Shown here in pieces: positions 1-62,385 of a stretch of 64,000 nt of DNA. The stretch's first letter is position 1. The number at the start of each line of letters is the position of its first letter. The DNA comes from Paragordius varius (taxonomy: Eukaryota; Animalia; Nematomorpha): positions 806,001 through 870,000 of the forward strand of contig OZ176060.1 of NCBI GenBank assembly GCA_964247055.1, in the 5' to 3' direction. Position numbers and translations under genes: made by a program. The notes under the pieces were generated by a model. The model did no database searches. It saw nothing but the letters and a program-made list of their open reading frames with translations, and was not told the DNA's origin.

Positions 1-277
1 AAAATTCTATCAGCTGTCCTGCCATATGGTTATTAGCATTATTTATTTTATTAAAAAGTATTTATTTATTTAAATAAATTTATAATTTTTTTTTAAAATA
101 AAATAATATATCAATAATATAAATTATCAGCTGTAATAAATATTTTTTTATTTATAACATCAATTTTATTAAAATTCCTTTTTAAATAAGATAATTTAAT
201 ATAATATTTTAATTTTTATATAATATTTAAATAAATAAATTATATTAATTTAATTTTTTATATTATTTATGTTTTAG

Positions 278-348
278 GAATCCAAATCAACTGATAGTGG
301 AAAACAACAGCTGTTTAAAGCCGTTTGGGAAAAATATTCTGCAATTGG
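278..348 (+). CDS. Internal exon of an unidentified gene whose 5' part lies upstream of the window; reads ESKSTDSGKQQLFKAVWEKYSAI(G)
   Basis: GC-richer island after a pyrimidine tract and ttttag acceptor (AG 276-277); open frame from 278; GT donor at 349. It ends in phase 2 (GG) and joins the exon at 1280 (A) to give GGA with the frame maintained. Confidence 0.55.
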
Positions 349-1279
349 GTTTTTATTAAATTAAATAATTTATTTTCTAACTATTTTTAAAATTAAAAAA
401 TATTTTTATATATTAGGTTTATAATTAAATTTTTAGAAAAAATATTTTTCCATATTTTATTGATAATTTTGTAAAATATCAGCTGCTTTGATCAAATGAA
501 AATAGTTTATTTTTCAAAAATCAGCTGTTTTAATATAAAAATTTAATTAAAATTAAAAATAAAAAATTATTTTATAAATAATATTACCAAATATATAGAG
601 AGAAAAATTTAAATATTATTAAATATTTCAATTGTTTGTTTAATGATTTTTTATTAAAAAATAATATTTTATGTTTTGGTAATTATTCTTTTATATTTTT
701 TTACTTAAAATTATATAGAATATAAAATAAAATTTAATTTTATTTCAAAACAGCTGTATAAAAAAAATTTATTTAAATAATAATACATTAACTAATTCTT
801 ATATTAATATTAAAAAATATTTATTTAATTTATTTTATTTTTAATAGTTTTTTATTAAACAGCTGTAATTATAATTTTATTCTAAATTAATTTAGTATTT
901 ATTTTTTTTTATAATTTTTTAATATTTATGAAAAATTTAAATAAATAAATTAAAAAAAAAATAGGGATATTAATATAAAAATAATATTTTTTAAATAATG
1001 TAATTTATATATTTCAAAATAAAAAATTTTAAAATTATTTTTTTATATTTTTATTTAAAACAGCTGTTTAAAATAAATTTATTTTATGGGTATTTAGTAT
1101 TTTTTTATATTTTAAAATGGTATATTAATATAAATACTTATTTTTTAATATTTTTTATTCAAAACAGCTTTTTTAATTCAAAACAACTATTTTAATAAAT
1201 ATATTTAATTATATATTATATTTAATAATTTTTTATTCAAACAGCTGTTTTTTAAAAAAATATTTTTTTTATTCTTTAG

Positions 1280-1340
1280 ATTCGATGAAGTCTCAAAGAT
1301 GGAACCACCGCCCCCTTATAAAATTCTCATTAATAAATAA
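1280..1340 (+). CDS. Terminal exon of the same unidentified gene; reads FDEVSKMEPPPPYKILINK*
   Basis: ttctttag acceptor (AG 1278-1279), GC-rich codons in ~90% AT surroundings, stop TAA at 1338-1340, phase-compatible with exon 278-348. Product not recognised. Confidence 0.6.
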
Positions 1341-2149
1341 AATATTTTATAAACAGCTGTTTAAAATAAATATTTTTATATCAGCTGTTTGAAATAAATT
1401 TTTTTTATATTAATTTGATTTATTTATATATTTTTATTTTATTTTTTAATTATATATTTAGTTTTAATTCGAGATAAATATTTAAAAGTTTAATAAATCA
1501 GCTGTTTGAAATAAATATTTTTGTAAATATTTTAAATTTATATGTTTGCTTGATATATTACTTTTAAAATATTAAATATAATAAATATATAAATTATTTA
1601 TATAATTTTTGTAATTAGTTATTTTTTATTTTTTTTTATTATATAAATTTATTTATAATTTTTTATATTTTCATTTTATCAATTGAAAAAATTTATAATC
1701 AGCTTAAAATTATTTTTTTATATTATTATTAAATAATTATTATAAAATCTAATTTTTTACAAATTCTTAAAAATATATAATATTTTATAAATCAGCTGTT
1801 TGAAATATTATATTACACCAGCTTATTTTTAAAATCAGCTGTTAAATAATTTTTATAATCAGCTGTTATGAGTGGATTTTTTATTCGTACGTTTGCTTAA
1901 AGGTCACTACCCTCTTTTTAAAAATTTTAAATAAATTTAAAAAAAAACTTTTTATATATCAGCTGTTAATTAAAATATTTTTTATGTTTTATTTTTATCT
2001 AAATATTTGAAAAAAAATGAAAACAATAAATATTTTAATAAATCAGGTGTTTTTAAAAAAAAATATATTTTTATGAATCAGCTGTTTCAATATATTTTTA
2101 TATATTTAATATTTAAATTAATAATAATTAATTCTTCATAAAAGACTGG

Positions 2150-59800: not shown

Positions 59801-60049
59801 ATAGAATGTCGCATTTATATTGGTCTATGAGAGAGAAAAATATAATTATATTCATAATCACATGATTACATTCATTCATTGATCACCTGATTTATTATTT
59901 AGGAATTTGCCTGTAATGGAACTGTGATTGAACACCCCGAATTCGGTGAAGTCCTTCAACTCCAAGGCGATCAACGTAAGAATGTCAGCAGTTTCCTGGT
60001 TAAATCGGGAATAGCTAAACAGGAAGCACTTAAAATACACGGGTTTTAG
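53820..60049 (+). CDS. EIF1: Translation initiation factor eIF1 (SUI1), 110 aa; join(53820..53850, 56269..56423, 59903..60049)
   Basis: Reads MSSIQNFNTKDPFGDINIDKDTSADSYIHIRIQQRNGRKTLTTVQGIAPEYDLKEIVRACKKEFACNGTVIEHPEFGEVLQLQGDQRKNVSSFLVKSGIAKQEALKIHGF*. GT-AG introns, phases 1 and 0, at the positions I recall for vertebrate EIF1 introns 1 and 2. Confidence 0.96.
55293..55812 (+). repeat. Two echoes of the eIF1 intron-1 acceptor plus ~55 nt of exon 2
   Basis: ttagatccattaggtgacattaat...cagctgatagctatatt at 55293-55346 and ttagacccatttggtgacattaat...cagctgatagctatattc at 55753-55812. Confidence 0.92.
56269..56423 (+). CDS. EIF1: eIF1 exon 2
   Basis: ttttag acceptor and gtaagt donor at 56424; lies within ORF 56217..56468. 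Confidence 0.96.
56424..58300 (+). repeat. About 8 echoes of the eIF1 exon-2 end plus donor (~220-350 bp unit)
   Basis: ...aaagaaattgtc(a/c)g(a/g)gcttgtaaaaaagtaagtaaatacttg at ~56571-56660, 56815, 57005, 57310, 57650, 57920, 58078 and 58255. Confidence 0.93.
58300..59902 (+). repeat. Seven echoes of the eIF1 intron-2 acceptor plus the first 36 nt of exon 3
   Basis: cattcattgatcacctgattt...taggaatttgcctgtaatggaactgtgattgaacacccc-ttag at ~58565, 58705, 58834, 58966, 59256, 59408 and 59746. Confidence 0.94.
59903..60049 (+). CDS. EIF1: eIF1 exon 3 (EFACNG...KIHGF*)
   Basis: tttag acceptor (AG 59901-59902), 48 codons plus TAG; not in the ORF track. Confidence 0.96.
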   Translation, partial: EFACNGTVIEHPEFGEVLQLQGDQRKNVSSFLVKSGIAKQEALKIHGF

Positions 60050-60600
60050 CACACATTCATTAATCACCTGATTACCAACAGCTGTTTTTTACACCTCTTT
60101 AACAAACTTTTTAAAAACTTGCTTTTTTATTAAATCGGAAATAGATATGCCAGAAGCACTTAAAATACATGGATTTTAGTTGATGTTTATTCGTATACTA
60201 AAATCACCTGATGACCAACAGCTGTTATTACACCTATTTTTTCAACAAACTTTTGTAAAACTTACTTTTTGGGATTAATCGGGAATTGCTAAAAAGCACT
60301 TAAAATACACGGATTTTAGCATACATTCATTAATCACCTGATTACCAACAGCTGTTTTATACAATTTTTTTAACTAAAACTTTTGTAAAACTTCATTTTC
60401 CTGGTTAAATCGGGAATAGCTAAACAGGAAGTACTTAAAATACATGGATTTTAGTTAATGTTCACATTCATTTACACATTCAAAATCACCTGATTTAAAA
60501 CAGCTGTTATTACCTCTTTTTTCAACAATCTTTTGTAAAACTTACTTTTTGGGGTTAATCGGGAAATGCTAAGTTAGAAGTACTTAAAATACATGTTTAG
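60050..60600 (+). repeat. Four echoes of the eIF1 C-terminal codons, stop and 3' UTR start (~140 bp unit)
   Basis: aatcgggaatagctaaacaggaag(c/t)acttaaaatacatggattttag-like copies at ~60130, 60276, 60398 and 60555. Confidence 0.9.
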
Positions 60601-60748
60601 CACACATTAATTTATAAACTCAAGATCACCTGATTTTACTTTATTGCAATTATTTCAAATCCCGAATAACATTTCAAGCTCTAAAATACATACATGGCGT
60701 TTTAAAATCCACATATTTACATACTTAAGATCACCTGATTATTAATAG

Positions 60749-62385
60749 CAGCAGCTGTTTTAACTCAATTAATCAAATAGTCAAAACTTATTATCTTACC
60801 TACATTAATTCAAATTTTAACACAATTCTCCGTTAAACTCAAATTGCAATTTACGCATTCATTCATTCACTCAAGATCACCTGATTTTTTCATTACTTTT
60901 AGTTTTTTATCCTCTTTGGATAAAATATTTATTTTCGTTAACCACTAATCTATTAAAAGTTTTTGCACACTACATTCAAACTCACAATCATAAAATCACC
61001 TGGTTTTATAAAACTTAGTTTTTAAACATAAATTATGATAGCGCACATTCATTTATTAAACACCTGTTTTTGATTATCTTATAACCATGTTAGCGCTCAT
61101 TAATTCATTCGAATGATAAAACATATGATTAATGATAACTTTTATTTATTCATTAAACACCTGTTTTACTACTTTATATTATAACCATGTTTGCGCTAAT
61201 TTATCCAATCGAATGATAAAACATATGTTAATGATAACTTATTCATTCATAAAACACCTGTTTTAGCGATTACTTTAACCATGTTAGCACTCATTCATTC
61301 AGTCAGCTGATGATAAAACATATGATTAAGGATAATTTTTATATATGATTTACTAATAATCTAGCACGCATTAATTCACGATAATAATTTATAAATTTTT
61401 AGGTTAATTTCCAAAAAAAATTTTTTTTCTTTATTTTTATATTTATTTTTTTTATTTTTTATTCTATATTTTACTTTAATGATGAATTTTTTGGTTAATT
61501 ACTTAAATTTTGTATTTATCGCACATTCATTGATCAGCCGTTTAAAAACTATATATTTTTCAATACAAAAAATTAACTTTTAAAACACATCTTTTACGAA
61601 ACAACAGTAGCGTATGGTAAAAAACAAAAAATGGTGTAAATAAAACAATATATTTCCAATGATTTACCACATAATTTGCTTATTTAATTGAAATCAAAGT
61701 TTTTTTATACTTATACGCCACTGTAAATTTTGAAATTAACAACTATCTTTTTGCCATTAAAGTACACACATATATATATTTTTTAATGCTATATTGTAAT
61801 TATATTGATTTTTTTCTTTTATAAATACTATTTTGTATCTTAATTGACGCACTCGCATTATTATTTCTTATATGTAACTGGAATTTTATTTTTTATAAAT
61901 TATATATAAATATTTATTTCTAATAGTTTTTTCTGTTATAAATACTATTTTGTATATTAATTGACTCACTCGCATTATTATTTCTTATATGTAACTGAAA
62001 TTTTTTATTTTTATATAATATATAAATATTATAAGTTTTAATATTTAATTTTAATGAGTTTATATATATCATGAACATATGATTATGTGTACGTATGTAT
62101 GCCATTAATAAATAACATTTATTAATTTATTTGCTTTAATAATTTTTATTAAAAAAAATAAAATTATTAATTTGAAATTTTTAAATAATTATTTTTATTA
62201 TCCAGAAAAAATTTAATTTTATAATTATATAATTTTGTTTTAAAACTATTTTTTAACATTAAAAGTTTTTTCATATAATATTAAATAAATTTATTGTAAA
62301 AAATAATTTAATTAAATATAATAATGAAAGTTTTAATTTTAAAATTTCAAATAAATAGTTTTATATTGATTTTTTTTAAATTATA
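60749..62385 (+). repeat. Partner of the inverted duplication 45900-47334
   Basis: Same reverse-complement matches as listed for 45900-47334. Confidence 0.92.
61605..61723. mobile_element. Second copy of the 118 bp MITE-like element
   Basis: cagtagcgtatgg...tatacgccactg followed by TA. Confidence 0.45.

What the first reader, a model, noticed from the sequence alone, without database searches (positions are those of the whole stretch)
1..62000. One short motif family, CAG-N-Y-GA(T), pervades the window in several interchangeable flavours
CAGCTGAT/CAGCTGTT, CAGGTGAT (CACCTG on +), CAGACGAT and CAGATGAT all fit one consensus. They are almost the only G/C-containing words that survive in ~90% AT DNA. 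They recur every ~30-200 bp in otherwise unrelated repeat families, introns, UTRs and exons, and the flavours swap for one another at equivalent positions (arrays 1-4, repeat 8480-10745). Conservation of the core while flanks differ argues for a selected recognition or modification site rather than descent from a single transposon (inference). Candidate readers from established knowledge are E-box bHLH or Snail-type proteins (CAGCTG/CAGGTG) and Smad-type proteins (CAGAC). A chromatin, pairing or DNA-modification mark is equally open.
Basis: partly seen in the sequence, partly recalled or inferred. Interest (0 to 1): 0.85.

Follow-up and report, generated by a model that had tools for sequence, protein, structure and literature searches.

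The report
Palindromic DNA word saturating hairworm genes
In this very AT-rich hairworm genome a ten-letter palindrome (A-A/T-CAGCTG-A/T-T) is about a thousand times commoner than chance, is written into protein-coding sequence, and is absent from a related worm's copy of the same gene. The other 'flavours' lumped with it are cores of local repeat families.

Summary
The words are real and far above chance. AWCAGCTGWT occurs 58 times against 0.05 in shuffles, GCAGACGAT 89 against 0.01, and AWCAGGTGAT 42 against 0.08. They are not one family.

(1) AWCAGCTGWT is a true 10-bp palindrome.
- Its density is 9.5/kb in ERp44 exons and 6.9/kb in that gene's 3' flank. It is absent from about 35 kb of 5' flanks and intergenic DNA.
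- In the coding sequence it is the single outlier hexamer. All 8 compatible tripeptides are spelled with it.
- Several sites arose by substitution relative to Gordionus, whose orthologous locus has none in the gene.
- Its variants keep CA..TG and vary in the centre, as E-boxes do.

(2) CAGGTGAT is mostly the start of a ~30-nt segment: the ERp44 intron-2 acceptor plus the exon-3 start, copied locally.

(3) GCAGACGAT is the core of a 24-31-bp satellite confined to four blocks. CAGATG is partly its decay product.

Best reading (confidence 0.4): the decamer is kept by a DNA-level force and read on duplex DNA by a symmetric dimer, with an AP-4-type bHLH as the best candidate. Local duplication then spreads it.

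First readers noted the CAGCTG excess in at least 22 other stretches of this genome. I saw no follow-up on any, and I did not check them. Read laying failed, so there is no RNA evidence.

The parts
1..5424 (.). Zone dense in the decamer AWCAGCTGWT (23 CAGCTG, 4.2/kb). It probably covers the last exons and 3' flank of a +-strand gene at the window's left edge.
   Evidence: exon-like G/C islands at 273-355 and 1263-1340. The gene model was not verified.
2150..2720 (+). GCAGACGAT satellite block 1, period about 29-31 and 58 bp
6850..8010 (-). GCAGACGAT satellite block 2, opposite orientation, spacers 20-35 bp, many one-letter variants of the core
8481..11545 (.). ERp44 3' flank. It holds 157-195-bp tandem units, each with fixed positions for CAGACGAT and for CAGCTG-type words. 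There are 21 CAGCTG (6.9/kb). One unit position swaps between CAGATG, CAGCTG, CACCTG and CAACTG.
11546..12228 (-). ERp44 last coding exon. CAGCTG spells SAD, SAV, QL and TAD. ATCAGCTGAT starts directly after the stop codon. The acceptor ATCAG|CTG forms half of a motif.
12453..12945 (-). ERp44 exon 3. It has six CAGCTG (PAV, TAG, QL, SAV, SAV, TAD). The exon starts GTGATCAC after acceptor ATCAG, and the donor is CAG|GTGCG.
12946..15977 (-). ERp44 intron 2. The acceptor-side half holds about 12 decaying copies of 'acceptor + exon-3 start' (the source of CAGGTGAT here). The donor-side half holds short copies of the exon-2 end AAATCAGCTG|gt.
15978..16170 (-). ERp44 exon 2. It has two CAGCTG, one forming the last six bases of the exon.
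16027..44220 (.). 28.2 kb without a single CAGCTG. It covers the ERp44 5' side, satellite block 3, AT-rich DNA and the 16.5-kb (TAA)n array.
17800..20500 (+). GCAGACGAT satellite block 3, the largest, period 24-31 bp. It contains a paralog of block 1.
41961..45160 (-). Copies of the CAGGTGAT-A-ATGAATGAATG element, period about 400-500 bp
44280..45900 (-). GCAGACGAT satellite block 4 (165-179-bp higher-order units that also carry AACCAGCTGTT)
45907..49072 (+). Inverted mosaic copy of the eIF1 3' flank (60736-62375) and of ERp44 intron 2 (12909-14543). It carries the motif copies in the opposite orientation. At 48665 the CAGGTG of the source reads CAGCTG.
48671..55330 (.). 6.7 kb upstream of eIF1 without CAGCTG
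55291..61310 (+). eIF1 gene with copies of its own exon edges. The exon at about 56270-56415 spells TSADS with ATCAGCTGAT. Two upstream copies of that exon start lie at 55290 and 55750. Intron 2 and the 3' flank carry the CAGGTGAT element antisense. The 3' UTR start has ATCACCTGAT and AACAGCTGTT within 35 nt of the stop.

Best explanation
Three separate things share the letters CAG.

(A) The palindromic decamer A-W-CAGCTG-W-T.
- Shown: it is a lineage-specific word concentrated in coding exons and in the DNA just downstream of genes.
- Shown: a DNA-level force creates and keeps it, overriding codon and even amino-acid choice.
- Inferred: it is recognised on double-stranded DNA by a symmetric dimer with E-box specificity. 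The CA..TG positions are fixed, the central pair is free, and the A/T flanks are symmetric.
- Inferred: bound or selected sites escape the strong G/C-to-A/T decay of this genome. The genome's frequent local duplications of exon edges and flanks then carry copies into introns and 3' flanks, where the word outlasts its surroundings.
- One-step variants at the central pair (CAGGTG, CAGATG) remain acceptable, and so they swap at equivalent positions.

(B) Most CAGGTGAT copies are the first 8 letters of a ~30-nt unit. That unit is a real splice acceptor plus the exon start of ERp44, and a related dispersed element. It was multiplied by the same local duplication.

(C) GCAGACGAT is the conserved core of a 24-31-bp satellite. 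It lies in four blocks, two on each strand. It is unrelated to (A) apart from chance overlap of letters, and part of the CAGATGAT copies are its C-to-T decay products.
For: Excess:
- AWCAGCTGWT occurs 58 times against 0.05 in shuffles.
- CAGCTG is 100-fold over local composition, and it is the only one of 64 palindromic hexamers so enriched.

Coding sequence:
- There are 10 CAGCTG in two ERp44 exons against 1.3 under synonymous shuffling, with 0 of 2000 shuffles reaching 10.
- All 8 [STPA]-A-[VADEG] tripeptides and 2 of 3 Gln-Leu pairs are spelled with it.
- It is the top outlier hexamer, 12 against 1.4.
- Only two reading frames are used. The third would give TGA or Cys.

Symmetry within one gene's sense strand:
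- A at -2 in 9 of 12 sites and T at +2 in 10 of 12.
- In the whole window, -2 is A in 93% and +2 is T in 90% of copies. The two W positions vary independently.

Origin by substitution and lineage specificity:
- The Gordionus sp. m RMFG-2023 ortholog is intronless and has 0 CAGCTG. The 21.5-kb locus has 1 against 0.66 expected.
- In ungapped blocks TCA TCT GTC corresponds to TCA GCT GTT, and AAT CTT to CAG CTG.

Little decay:
- Transition neighbours TAGCTG and CAACTG number 2 and 8 against 4.3 expected each.
- Among one-mismatch decamers, 62 differ at the central position and only 8 at CA/TG.

Not explained by copy number: 58-69 flank-distinct contexts among 82 copies.

Distribution: 9.5/kb in exons, 6.9/kb in the ERp44 3' flank, 1.8/kb in introns, none in 28.2 kb and 6.7 kb of 5'/intergenic DNA.

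Reader candidate: AP4 homodimers bind CAGCTG and, less often, CACCTG (PMC3698521).

(B).

(C). The core shows 0.94 identity against 0.80 for flanks.

Other windows: at least 22 unchecked first-reader notes report CAGCTG in exons elsewhere in this genome, one giving the same AWCAGCTGWT consensus.
Against:
- No known transcription-factor site occurs at about 10/kb inside coding exons, and no function for such density is established.
- The flank preference of AP-4 (AWCAGCTGWT) is my recollection of published SELEX motifs. I could not confirm it in the library.
- Between detectable paralogs the CAGCTG core is only modestly better kept than its flanks: 0.86 against 0.81, rank 39 of 72 G/C-rich hexamers.
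- Exon-plus-3'-flank enrichment would also fit a signal that acts in mature RNA.
- The genome-wide claim rests on unchecked notes. Only two genes could be examined here, and eIF1 has a single exonic site.
- Selection on thousands of weak sites is hard to sustain in a parasite with a small population. This favours a drive.
Confidence: 0.4

Rival explanations
1. A self-propagating DNA word with no host function. A motif-directed repair, modification or cut-and-repair activity converts near-cognate sequences into AWCAGCTGWT and restores damaged copies. The word then accumulates wherever the protein tolerates it, as uptake sequences do in competent bacteria.
For: - Sites arise by A/T-to-G/C substitutions against the genome's bias.
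- They sit mostly in poorly conserved or gapped protein segments. None of the 11 motif-encoded residues in the last exon is invariant among orthologs.
- Only the two tolerable reading frames are used.
- CAGGTG changes to CAGCTG recurrently in non-coding copies.
- The same coding-region pattern is described for bacterial uptake sequences (PMC2817400).
- Unchecked notes place duplication breakpoints at CAGCTG.
Against: - No such activity is known in animals.
- One-step transition neighbours are not clearly depleted: CAACTG 8 against 4.3 expected.
- A genome-wide drive would not obviously spare 5' flanks and intergenic DNA.
Confidence: 0.2
2. The word acts in mature RNA. It is self-complementary, so any two copies can pair. 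It may shape or stabilise very AU-rich mRNAs, or bring distant parts of transcripts together.
For: - It is enriched in exons and in the DNA just after stop codons, the parts that would be in mRNA, and it is rare in introns apart from exon-edge copies.
- In the predicted fold of the spliced ERp44 message, 14 of 16 CAGCTG pair with one another. The MFE is -485.6 against -457.2 +/- 5.0 kcal/mol with the cores scrambled.
- Symmetric flanks are also what RNA-RNA pairing needs.
Against: - The pairing result follows automatically from self-complementarity.
- Perfect 10-bp palindromes (AT..AT, AA..TT; 28 copies) are no commoner than mixed ones (30 copies), as expected if the halves are independent.
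- Close doublets are no more frequent than the density predicts (my estimate).
- Whether the 3' flanks are transcribed is unknown.
- Inverted copies at 45.9-49.1 kb keep the word outside any known transcript.
Confidence: 0.12
3. Nothing is selected in the non-coding copies. The words are simply the complex cores of local repeat families. Copies arise by frequent tandem and inverted duplication. The A/T spacers turn over fast by slippage and become unalignable, so the cores only look conserved.
For: - The window is a patchwork of tandem and inverted duplications at 72-95% identity.
- CAGGTGAT and GCAGACGAT copies are demonstrably paralogs.
- Other G/C-rich words of young repeats are kept as well or better.
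- The median G/C-rich hexamer is 5 points better kept than its flanks.
- G/C letters in spacers are likely recent singletons, which biases the comparison.
Against: - It cannot explain the coding-sequence excess, the 8-of-8 tripeptides, or the substitutions relative to Gordionus.
- G/C sites should decay faster than A/T sites in a genome at about 12% G+C. Yet the cores are 3-4 times less diverged than flanks, and transition products of CAGCTG are near chance.
Confidence: 0.15
4. The words are transposon ends, subterminal transposase-binding repeats or excision footprints, for example of hAT-like MITEs, which are abundant in hairworm genomes.
For: - The GCAGACGAT blocks come as oppositely oriented pairs: 2150-2720 (+) with 6850-8010 (-), and 17800-20500 (+) with 44280-45900 (-).
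- About 100-bp units at 58453-58557 and 59135-59237 are bounded by inverted CAGGTGAT.
- hAT and hAT-MITE activity is reported in nematomorphs (bioRxiv 10.1101/2024.06.11.598342).
Against: - The flanks of CAGCTG are mirror-symmetric (A-W ... W-T), not direct target-site duplications.
- Coding sites lie in ungapped alignment blocks and differ from Gordionus by substitutions, not insertions.
- There are no shared terminal inverted repeats at the outer edges of the opposed blocks.
- No transposase ORF lies in the window.
Confidence: 0.08

Closest known systems
E-box (CANNTG) sites of homodimeric bHLH factors, especially AP-4/TFAP4 (C. elegans HLH-11, from memory)
   Same: - A palindromic CAGCTG core.
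- CACCTG is tolerated as a second choice (PMC3698521).
- CA and TG are invariant and the central pair is variable.
- The A/T flanks are symmetric. AP-4's AWCAGCTGWT preference is recalled from memory, not verified.
   Different: - Known sites are sparse and lie in promoters and enhancers.
- Here the density is about 10/kb inside coding exons and 3' flanks, and zero in the 5' flanks.
- No binding has been shown.
DNA uptake sequences (USS/DUS) of Pasteurellaceae and Neisseriaceae
   Same: - A fixed 9-12-letter word far above chance.
- It is frequent inside genes, in the tolerable reading frames and in less constrained protein segments.
- It shapes encoded tripeptides (PMC2817400).
   Different: Those accumulate through biased DNA uptake and recombination in competent bacteria, a route that does not exist in an animal germ line. 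They are also not palindromes of this kind.
Coding palindromes in hairworm mitochondrial genes (PMC6649704; PMC10380579)
   Same: The same animal phylum, and inverted-repeat DNA overlaid on protein-coding sequence at a cost to the protein.
   Different: Those are long (up to 284 bp) perfect inverted repeats of varied sequence in mitochondrial DNA. Here there is one fixed 10-bp nuclear word, and no other palindromic hexamer is enriched.
Satellite DNA with a conserved protein-binding box (for example the CENP-B box in alpha satellite, or nematode pairing-centre motifs; from memory)
   Same: For GCAGACGAT: a short conserved core inside otherwise variable short tandem units, clustered in blocks.
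   Different: No reader is known. The blocks are small (0.6-2.7 kb) and flank genes in opposed orientation. The earlier-notes word searches for CAGACGAT and CAGACG returned nothing.
Tandem duplication across exon-intron boundaries (the intron-by-duplication model; from memory)
   Same: For CAGGTGAT and the donor-side CAGCTG copies: intron ends filled with decaying copies of the adjoining exon edge and its splice site. Donor copies lie at the 5' end and acceptor copies at the 3' end.
   Different: The scale is dozens of copies per intron. The splice-site-proximal core also persists longer than the rest of each copy.

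Membership tests
E-box / bHLH homodimer site | CANNTG core | tested here: met
   CAGCTG, CAGGTG and CAGATG fit. Enrichment over local composition is 100-, 33- and 5-fold. CAGACG does not fit, because it has C where T is required.
E-box / bHLH homodimer site | CA and TG invariant, central dinucleotide tolerant | tested here: met
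   Among one-mismatch decamers, 62 differ at the central position and 8 at the CA/TG positions.
E-box / bHLH homodimer site | Two-fold symmetric flank preference | tested here: met
   Position -2 is A in 93% and +2 is T in 90% of copies. Positions -1 and +1 are W and vary independently. The symmetry also holds within the ERp44 sense strand.
E-box / bHLH homodimer site | A cognate bHLH protein binds the sites in vivo or in vitro | not testable with these tools
   No access to the genome's proteins, and no ChIP or pull-down data.
DNA transposon ends or footprints | Direct target-site duplication flanking the element | tested here: not met
   The flanks are mirror-symmetric (A-W ... W-T). AA..TT and AT..TT occur, but not AA..AA.
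DNA transposon ends or footprints | Presence or absence as an insertion relative to an orthologous empty site | tested here: not met
   Several coding sites lie in ungapped codon alignment with Gordionus and differ by substitutions. Other sites lie next to gaps, so the test is partial.
DNA transposon ends or footprints | Terminal inverted repeats enclosing a unit of defined length; a transposase gene | tested here: inconclusive
   Opposed GCAGACGAT blocks and two ~100-bp units bounded by inverted CAGGTGAT exist. No shared outer termini were found, and no long ORF.
Satellite / tandem repeat (for GCAGACGAT) | Head-to-tail arrays with a regular period, confined to blocks | tested here: met
   TRF periods are 26-31 bp with higher-order units of 58-248 bp. 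All 89 exact copies lie in four blocks.
Exon-edge duplication ('echo') family (for CAGGTGAT) | Homology to a real splice junction extends well beyond the motif and decays with distance | tested here: met
   Copies at 13142, 13324 and 13511 match the acceptor plus at least 45 nt of exon 3. More distant copies keep only the first ~25 nt.
Uptake-sequence-like over-represented word | Excess in coding DNA beyond codon usage, restricted frames, placement in less constrained protein parts | tested here: met
   on two genes only.
Uptake-sequence-like over-represented word | Accumulation by a transmission or repair bias | not testable with these tools
   This needs polymorphism or cross data.
   The 4-letter core is present in GCAGACGAT, but nothing here can test binding. 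The conserved unit is 9 letters, longer than the element.

The most novel reading that the evidence does not exclude
An animal lineage has evolved, or acquired, a motif-directed DNA activity that writes and maintains one 10-bp palindrome (AWCAGCTGWT) throughout its genes. The activity could be a sequence-specific repair, modification or cut-and-repair cycle. It overwrites codons and amino acids, and it seeds the local duplications ('echoes') that fill this genome's introns. This would be a eukaryotic counterpart of bacterial uptake sequences, working by a different and unknown drive.
Probability: 0.2. Interest if true: 0.9.

Novelty: new variant of a known kind. Interest (0 to 1): 0.7.

Why it matters
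If the decamer is kept by selection, this genome uses an E-box-type DNA word at a density and location never described: about one per 100 bp of coding exon. That would point to a new role for a dimeric DNA reader in marking genes or exons in a genome whose non-coding DNA has decayed to about 10% G+C.

If it is kept by a drive, it would be the first animal example of a short word spreading through coding sequence at the protein's expense.

Either way it gives a testable handle on three things: how exons stay recognisable in extreme A/T bias, why this genome accumulates exon-edge duplications, and how DNA-level constraints shape proteins. The Ser/Thr/Pro-Ala-Val/Asp/Gly and Gln-Leu insert-like motifs are an example. 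The word also misleads gene finders and motif scans in this genome.

Tried and rejected
- **Reads.** So there is no RNA, splice, polymorphism or related-species read evidence. After those letters were sent to no search tool. The Rfam scans were split around them. Local whole-window scripts still read the window file.
- **Own-species proteins or contigs.** Exact look-ups of the ERp44 exon product failed. Homology searches returned nothing closer than Gordionus at 53%. The barnacle ortholog locus, wanted for intron positions, was not on record.
- **'Former intron positions' idea for exonic CAGCTG.** One intron sits exactly in CAG|CTG and another directly after CAGCTG. The eIF1 junctions carry no motif, and the idea could not be tested further.
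- **General palindrome-making process.** Rejected. Only CAGCTG among 64 palindromic hexamers is enriched.
- **Sequencing or library artefact (adapter or ligation junctions).** Rejected. The context does not match, and the sites read through in frame in conserved genes.
- **CpG-methylation decay as the source of the flavours.** CAGACG does give CAGATG and CAGACA, but G-to-A at the non-CpG G (CAAACG, 23 copies) is as common. There is therefore no CpG-specific signal.
- **Branch-point, recursive-splice-site, U1-decoy and nematode Ruby-motif-like small-RNA promoter readings.** Each fits only a subset or one strand, and none could be tested.
- **Rfam.** No family matched.
- **Literature.** No paper combines CAGCTG with hairworm terms. 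The decamer strings hit only primers.
- **First self-BLAST.** It timed out on the (TAA)n array and was repeated with that array masked.

Full report
**Setting.** The window is 84.8% A+T overall. Non-coding stretches have 5-15% G+C and exons about 45%. It holds two recognisable genes.
- ERp44 lies on the minus strand. Its exons are about 16170-15978, 12945-12453 and 12228-11546. It matches thioredoxin-fold Pfam families and PDB ERp44, and it ends in RDEL.
- eIF1/SUI1 lies on the plus strand at about 56270-60048.
- Earlier notes of this scan call the genome a hairworm.
- The closest protein I found is ERp44 of Gordionus sp. m RMFG-2023, at 53% identity. The source is therefore another nematomorph.

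- CAGCTG occurs 83 times, against 0.5 expected from an order-1 Markov model and 0.83 from local 500-bp composition.
- CAGACG/CGTCTG occurs 137 times, CAGGTG/CACCTG 60, and CAGATG/CATCTG 26.
- The position profiles give three distinct extended consensuses: A-[T/A]-CAGCTG-[A/T]-T; AAA-[A/T]-CAGGTGAT followed by (C/T)A(C)ATGAATGAA; and [A/G]-GCAGACGAT.
- The exact extended forms occur 58, 42 and 89 times against 0.05, 0.08 and 0.01 in dinucleotide-preserving shuffles.
- 'Pervades the window' is too strong. CAGCTG is absent from 16027-44220 (28.2 kb) and 48671-55330 (6.7 kb).
- The family hexamers hold 12.5% of non-exonic G/C letters.

**Class A, the palindromic decamer.**
- *Flanks.* 58 of 83 CAGCTG copies carry the full A-W...W-T flanks. 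The two W positions vary independently: AT..AT 20, AT..TT 17, AA..AT 13, AA..TT 8. This is a two-fold symmetric site made of independent half-sites. It is not a direct target-site duplication.
- *Density.* 9.5/kb in ERp44 exons, 6.9/kb in the 3 kb downstream of ERp44, 4.2-4.4/kb in 1-5500 and downstream of eIF1, 1.8/kb in ERp44 introns, and zero on the 5' sides of both genes.
- *Coding test.* Two ERp44 exons hold 10 CAGCTG against 1.3 +/- 1.0 after shuffling synonymous codons. None of 2000 shuffles reached 10.
- *Tripeptides.* Every one of the 8 [S/T/P/A]-Ala-[V/A/D/E/G] tripeptides is spelled xCA GCT Gxx, and 2 of 3 Gln-Leu pairs are spelled CAG CTG. Yet TCA is only 7 of 28 Ser codons and GCT 15 of 41 Ala codons.
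- *Uniqueness.* Scanning all hexamers against the same null, CAGCTG is the single strong outlier (12 against 1.4). The next ones are its own sub-words. One eIF1 exon was sliced out of frame in that script, which does not affect the ranking.
- *Frames.* Only two reading frames are used. The third would read TGA or Cys.
- *Sense-strand symmetry.* Within the ERp44 sense strand alone, -2 is A in 9 of 12 sites and +2 is T in 10 of 12. This argues for recognition of a duplex rather than of a single RNA strand.

**Origin of the decamer.**
- The Gordionus ortholog lies on a 93.7-Mb chromosome record. The gene is intronless (1470 bp for 489 codons).
- The 21.5-kb locus L001 (24% G+C) has one CAGCTG against 0.66 expected, and none in the gene.
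- The codon alignment shows sites in ungapped blocks that differ by substitutions: TCA TCT GTC against TCA GCT GTT; CAT AAT CTT TTA against CAT CAG CTG TTG; CAA ATA against CAG CTG.
- Other sites lie beside lineage-specific gaps relative to other animals.
- At least part of the exonic sites were therefore made by A/T-to-G/C point changes, against the prevailing bias. They were not delivered by an inserted element.
- None of the 11 motif-encoded residues of the last exon is invariant among orthologs. That pattern is expected if the word settles where the protein tolerates it.

**Does the decamer decay?**
- The products of the commonest mutations in such a genome are TAGCTG/CAGCTA and CAACTG/CAGTTG. 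They number 2 and 8 against 4.3 expected each by composition, beside 83 intact copies.
- Among decamers one mismatch away from the consensus, 62 differ at the central position (50 are CAGGTG-type). Eleven differ at each flank position, and only 8 at the CA/TG positions. That is the tolerance profile of an E-box.
- Among the 64 palindromic hexamers only CAGCTG is strongly enriched, so a general palindrome-making process is excluded.
- After grouping copies by flank similarity, calibrated on random anchors, 58-69 distinct contexts remain among 82 copies. This is probably an overestimate, because A/T flanks lose alignability quickly.
- One caveat applies. Between BLAST-detectable paralogs the CAGCTG core is only a little better kept than its flanks: 0.86 against 0.81, rank 39 of 72 G/C-rich hexamers.

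**Class B, CAGGTGAT.**
- Reading ERp44 on its own strand, intron 2 ends ...aaaatcag. Exon 3 then begins GTGATCACATGAATGAACC..., which codes for Asp-His-Met-Asn-Glu-Pro.
- The acceptor-side half of the intron holds about a dozen copies of 'acceptor plus exon start'. The nearest three match for at least 45 nt. The farther ones keep only the first ~25 nt.
- The donor-side half holds short copies of the exon-2 end, AAATCAGCTG|gt.
- A sister form of the same ~30-nt unit (CAGGTGAT-C/A-A-ATGAATGAATG) occurs at 41961-45160. It also occurs antisense in eIF1 intron 2 and its 3' flank, and in the inverted mosaic at 45907-49072.
- At least 40 of 60 CAGGTG copies belong to this family.
- Anchoring the family on its extension rather than on the core shows mostly CAGGTG at the core. 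There are also three CAGCTG, two CAGTTG, three TAGGTG, and single other variants.
- Within the family the core is the most persistent part: 0.96 against 0.82 for flanks, and 0.74 for flank G/C letters.

**Class C, GCAGACGAT.**
- All 89 exact copies lie in four blocks: 2150-2720 (+), 6850-8010 (-), 17800-20500 (+) and 44280-45900 (-).
- Spacings are 24-31 bp, with higher-order units. Blocks 1 and 3 share a paralogous segment.
- The core is far better kept than the spacers: 0.94 against 0.80, and 0.66 for spacer G/C letters. It ranks top among G/C-rich hexamers.
- It decays to CAGATG (26 copies), CAAACG (23), CAGACA (11) and TAGACG (5). Part of the 'CAGATGAT flavour' is thus its C-to-T product. 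The CpG is not specially unstable.
- It is not an E-box and never exchanges with CAGCTG at an equivalent position. In the 8480-10745 repeat the two occupy different fixed places in the unit.
- The earlier-notes word searches for CAGACGAT and CAGACG returned nothing. I treat it as a local satellite with a conserved box.
- The opposed orientation of the blocks is reminiscent of transposon subterminal repeats. However, I found no shared outer termini, target-site duplications or transposase ORF.

**How it most likely works.**
- *Shown.* The decamer is a duplex-symmetric word. It is enriched in exons and gene 3' flanks, was created in part by substitution, and resists decay. The other flavours are cores of local repeat families that this genome's frequent tandem and inverted duplications multiply.
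- *Inferred.* A symmetric dimer reads the decamer, and the sites are kept by selection or protected from mutation. An AP-4-type bHLH is the best candidate. AP4 homodimers bind CAGCTG and, at lower frequency, CACCTG (PMC3698521). Its flank preference is from my memory only.
- *Confidence.* I put 0.4 on this reading.
- *Rivals.* A functionless self-propagating word, analogous in outcome to bacterial uptake sequences (PMC2817400), gets 0.2. A role in mature RNA through self-pairing gets 0.12: in the predicted fold, 14 of 16 copies pair with each other, which follows from self-complementarity. Neutral repeat cores get 0.15. That rival explains classes B and C but not the coding data. Transposon ends or footprints get 0.08.

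**Scope and novelty.**
- First readers of at least 22 other stretches of this genome independently noted CAGCTG in coding exons. One gave the same AWCAGCTGWT consensus, and others gave counts of 20-21 copies per gene in two frames.
- I saw no follow-up on any of them and could not check them, because no other DNA of this genome was reachable.
- No paper in the library mentions CAGCTG together with hairworms.
- The nearest published oddity in the phylum is long coding palindromes in mitochondrial genes (PMC6649704). That is a different phenomenon.

**Limits.** Only two genes were available. There are no reads, no polymorphism data and no binding data. Gordionus is too distant to polarise changes.

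Noticed in passing
window 24600-41700: A 16.5-kb (TAA)n array, interrupted at intervals by a ~140-150-bp C/T-rich cassette (TRF period 3, about 5500 copies). It holds no CAG-type motif.
   Followed up: no
L001:10001-11470 versus window 11546-16170: The Gordionus ERp44 gene is intronless. This genome's ortholog has at least two introns inside the aligned part (about 225 nt and 3.0 kb), and the exon starting at 16170 is preceded by an acceptor, which implies one more upstream. The 3.0-kb intron is built from copies of its own exon edges. Synonymous sites here are much more G/C-rich than in Gordionus, although non-coding DNA is far more A/T-rich.
   Followed up: partly
window 11536-11548, 60049-60086, about 1337-1360: In ERp44 the decamer ATCAGCTGAT begins at the base after the stop codon. 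In eIF1, ATCACCTGAT and AACAGCTGTT lie 13 and 27 nt after the stop. A possible last exon at the left edge is followed by AACAGCTGTT within about 20 nt.
   Followed up: no
window 12229-12452: ERp44 intron 3 sits exactly inside a CAG|CTG: the exon ends ...TTTTACAG and the next exon starts CTGTTGG. It ends with a near-copy of the decamer (ATCAGCCGAT) 4 nt before the real acceptor ATCAG. The spliced message regains CAGCTG at the junction.
   Followed up: partly
window 58453-58557 and 59135-59237: Two ~100-bp units are bounded by inverted CAGGTGAT ... ATCACCTG, with A-run and T-run flanks. They are MITE-like in shape.
   Followed up: no
window 45907-49072: An inverted mosaic. 45907-47346 copies 62375-60736 (eIF1 3' flank, about 85% identity). 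47364-47803 copies 14543-14106, and 48057-49072 copies the ERp44 intron-2/exon-3 boundary.
   Followed up: partly
window 5433-6615: A young 179/362-bp tandem repeat (94% identity) carrying a (GT)n run and a G/C-bearing word set (TTGAAACAATGCAACAATG) unrelated to the CAG family. This shows that other G/C words also persist in repeats.
   Followed up: no
window 16500-17300: Three decaying copies of the 5' part of ERp44 exon 2 (...CATCTGTTAACTC...GGTTCGGA...) lie upstream of it in the same orientation. They account for the CATCTG copies there.
   Followed up: partly
window 22126-22536 (minus strand): A 136-codon ORF starts with a signal-peptide-like stretch followed by Asn/Gln-rich repeats. It may be ERp44 exon 1, which would put GCAGACGAT block 3 inside intron 1, antisense. 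Not verified.
   Followed up: no
window, many arrays: Many tandem repeats have periods of 140-195 bp (155, 157, 165, 171, 174, 177, 179, 182, 195). This is nucleosome-sized, and such units usually carry one or two motif copies.
   Followed up: no
The tool says this also trips by chance. The stretch was left out of all later search-tool calls.
   Followed up: no
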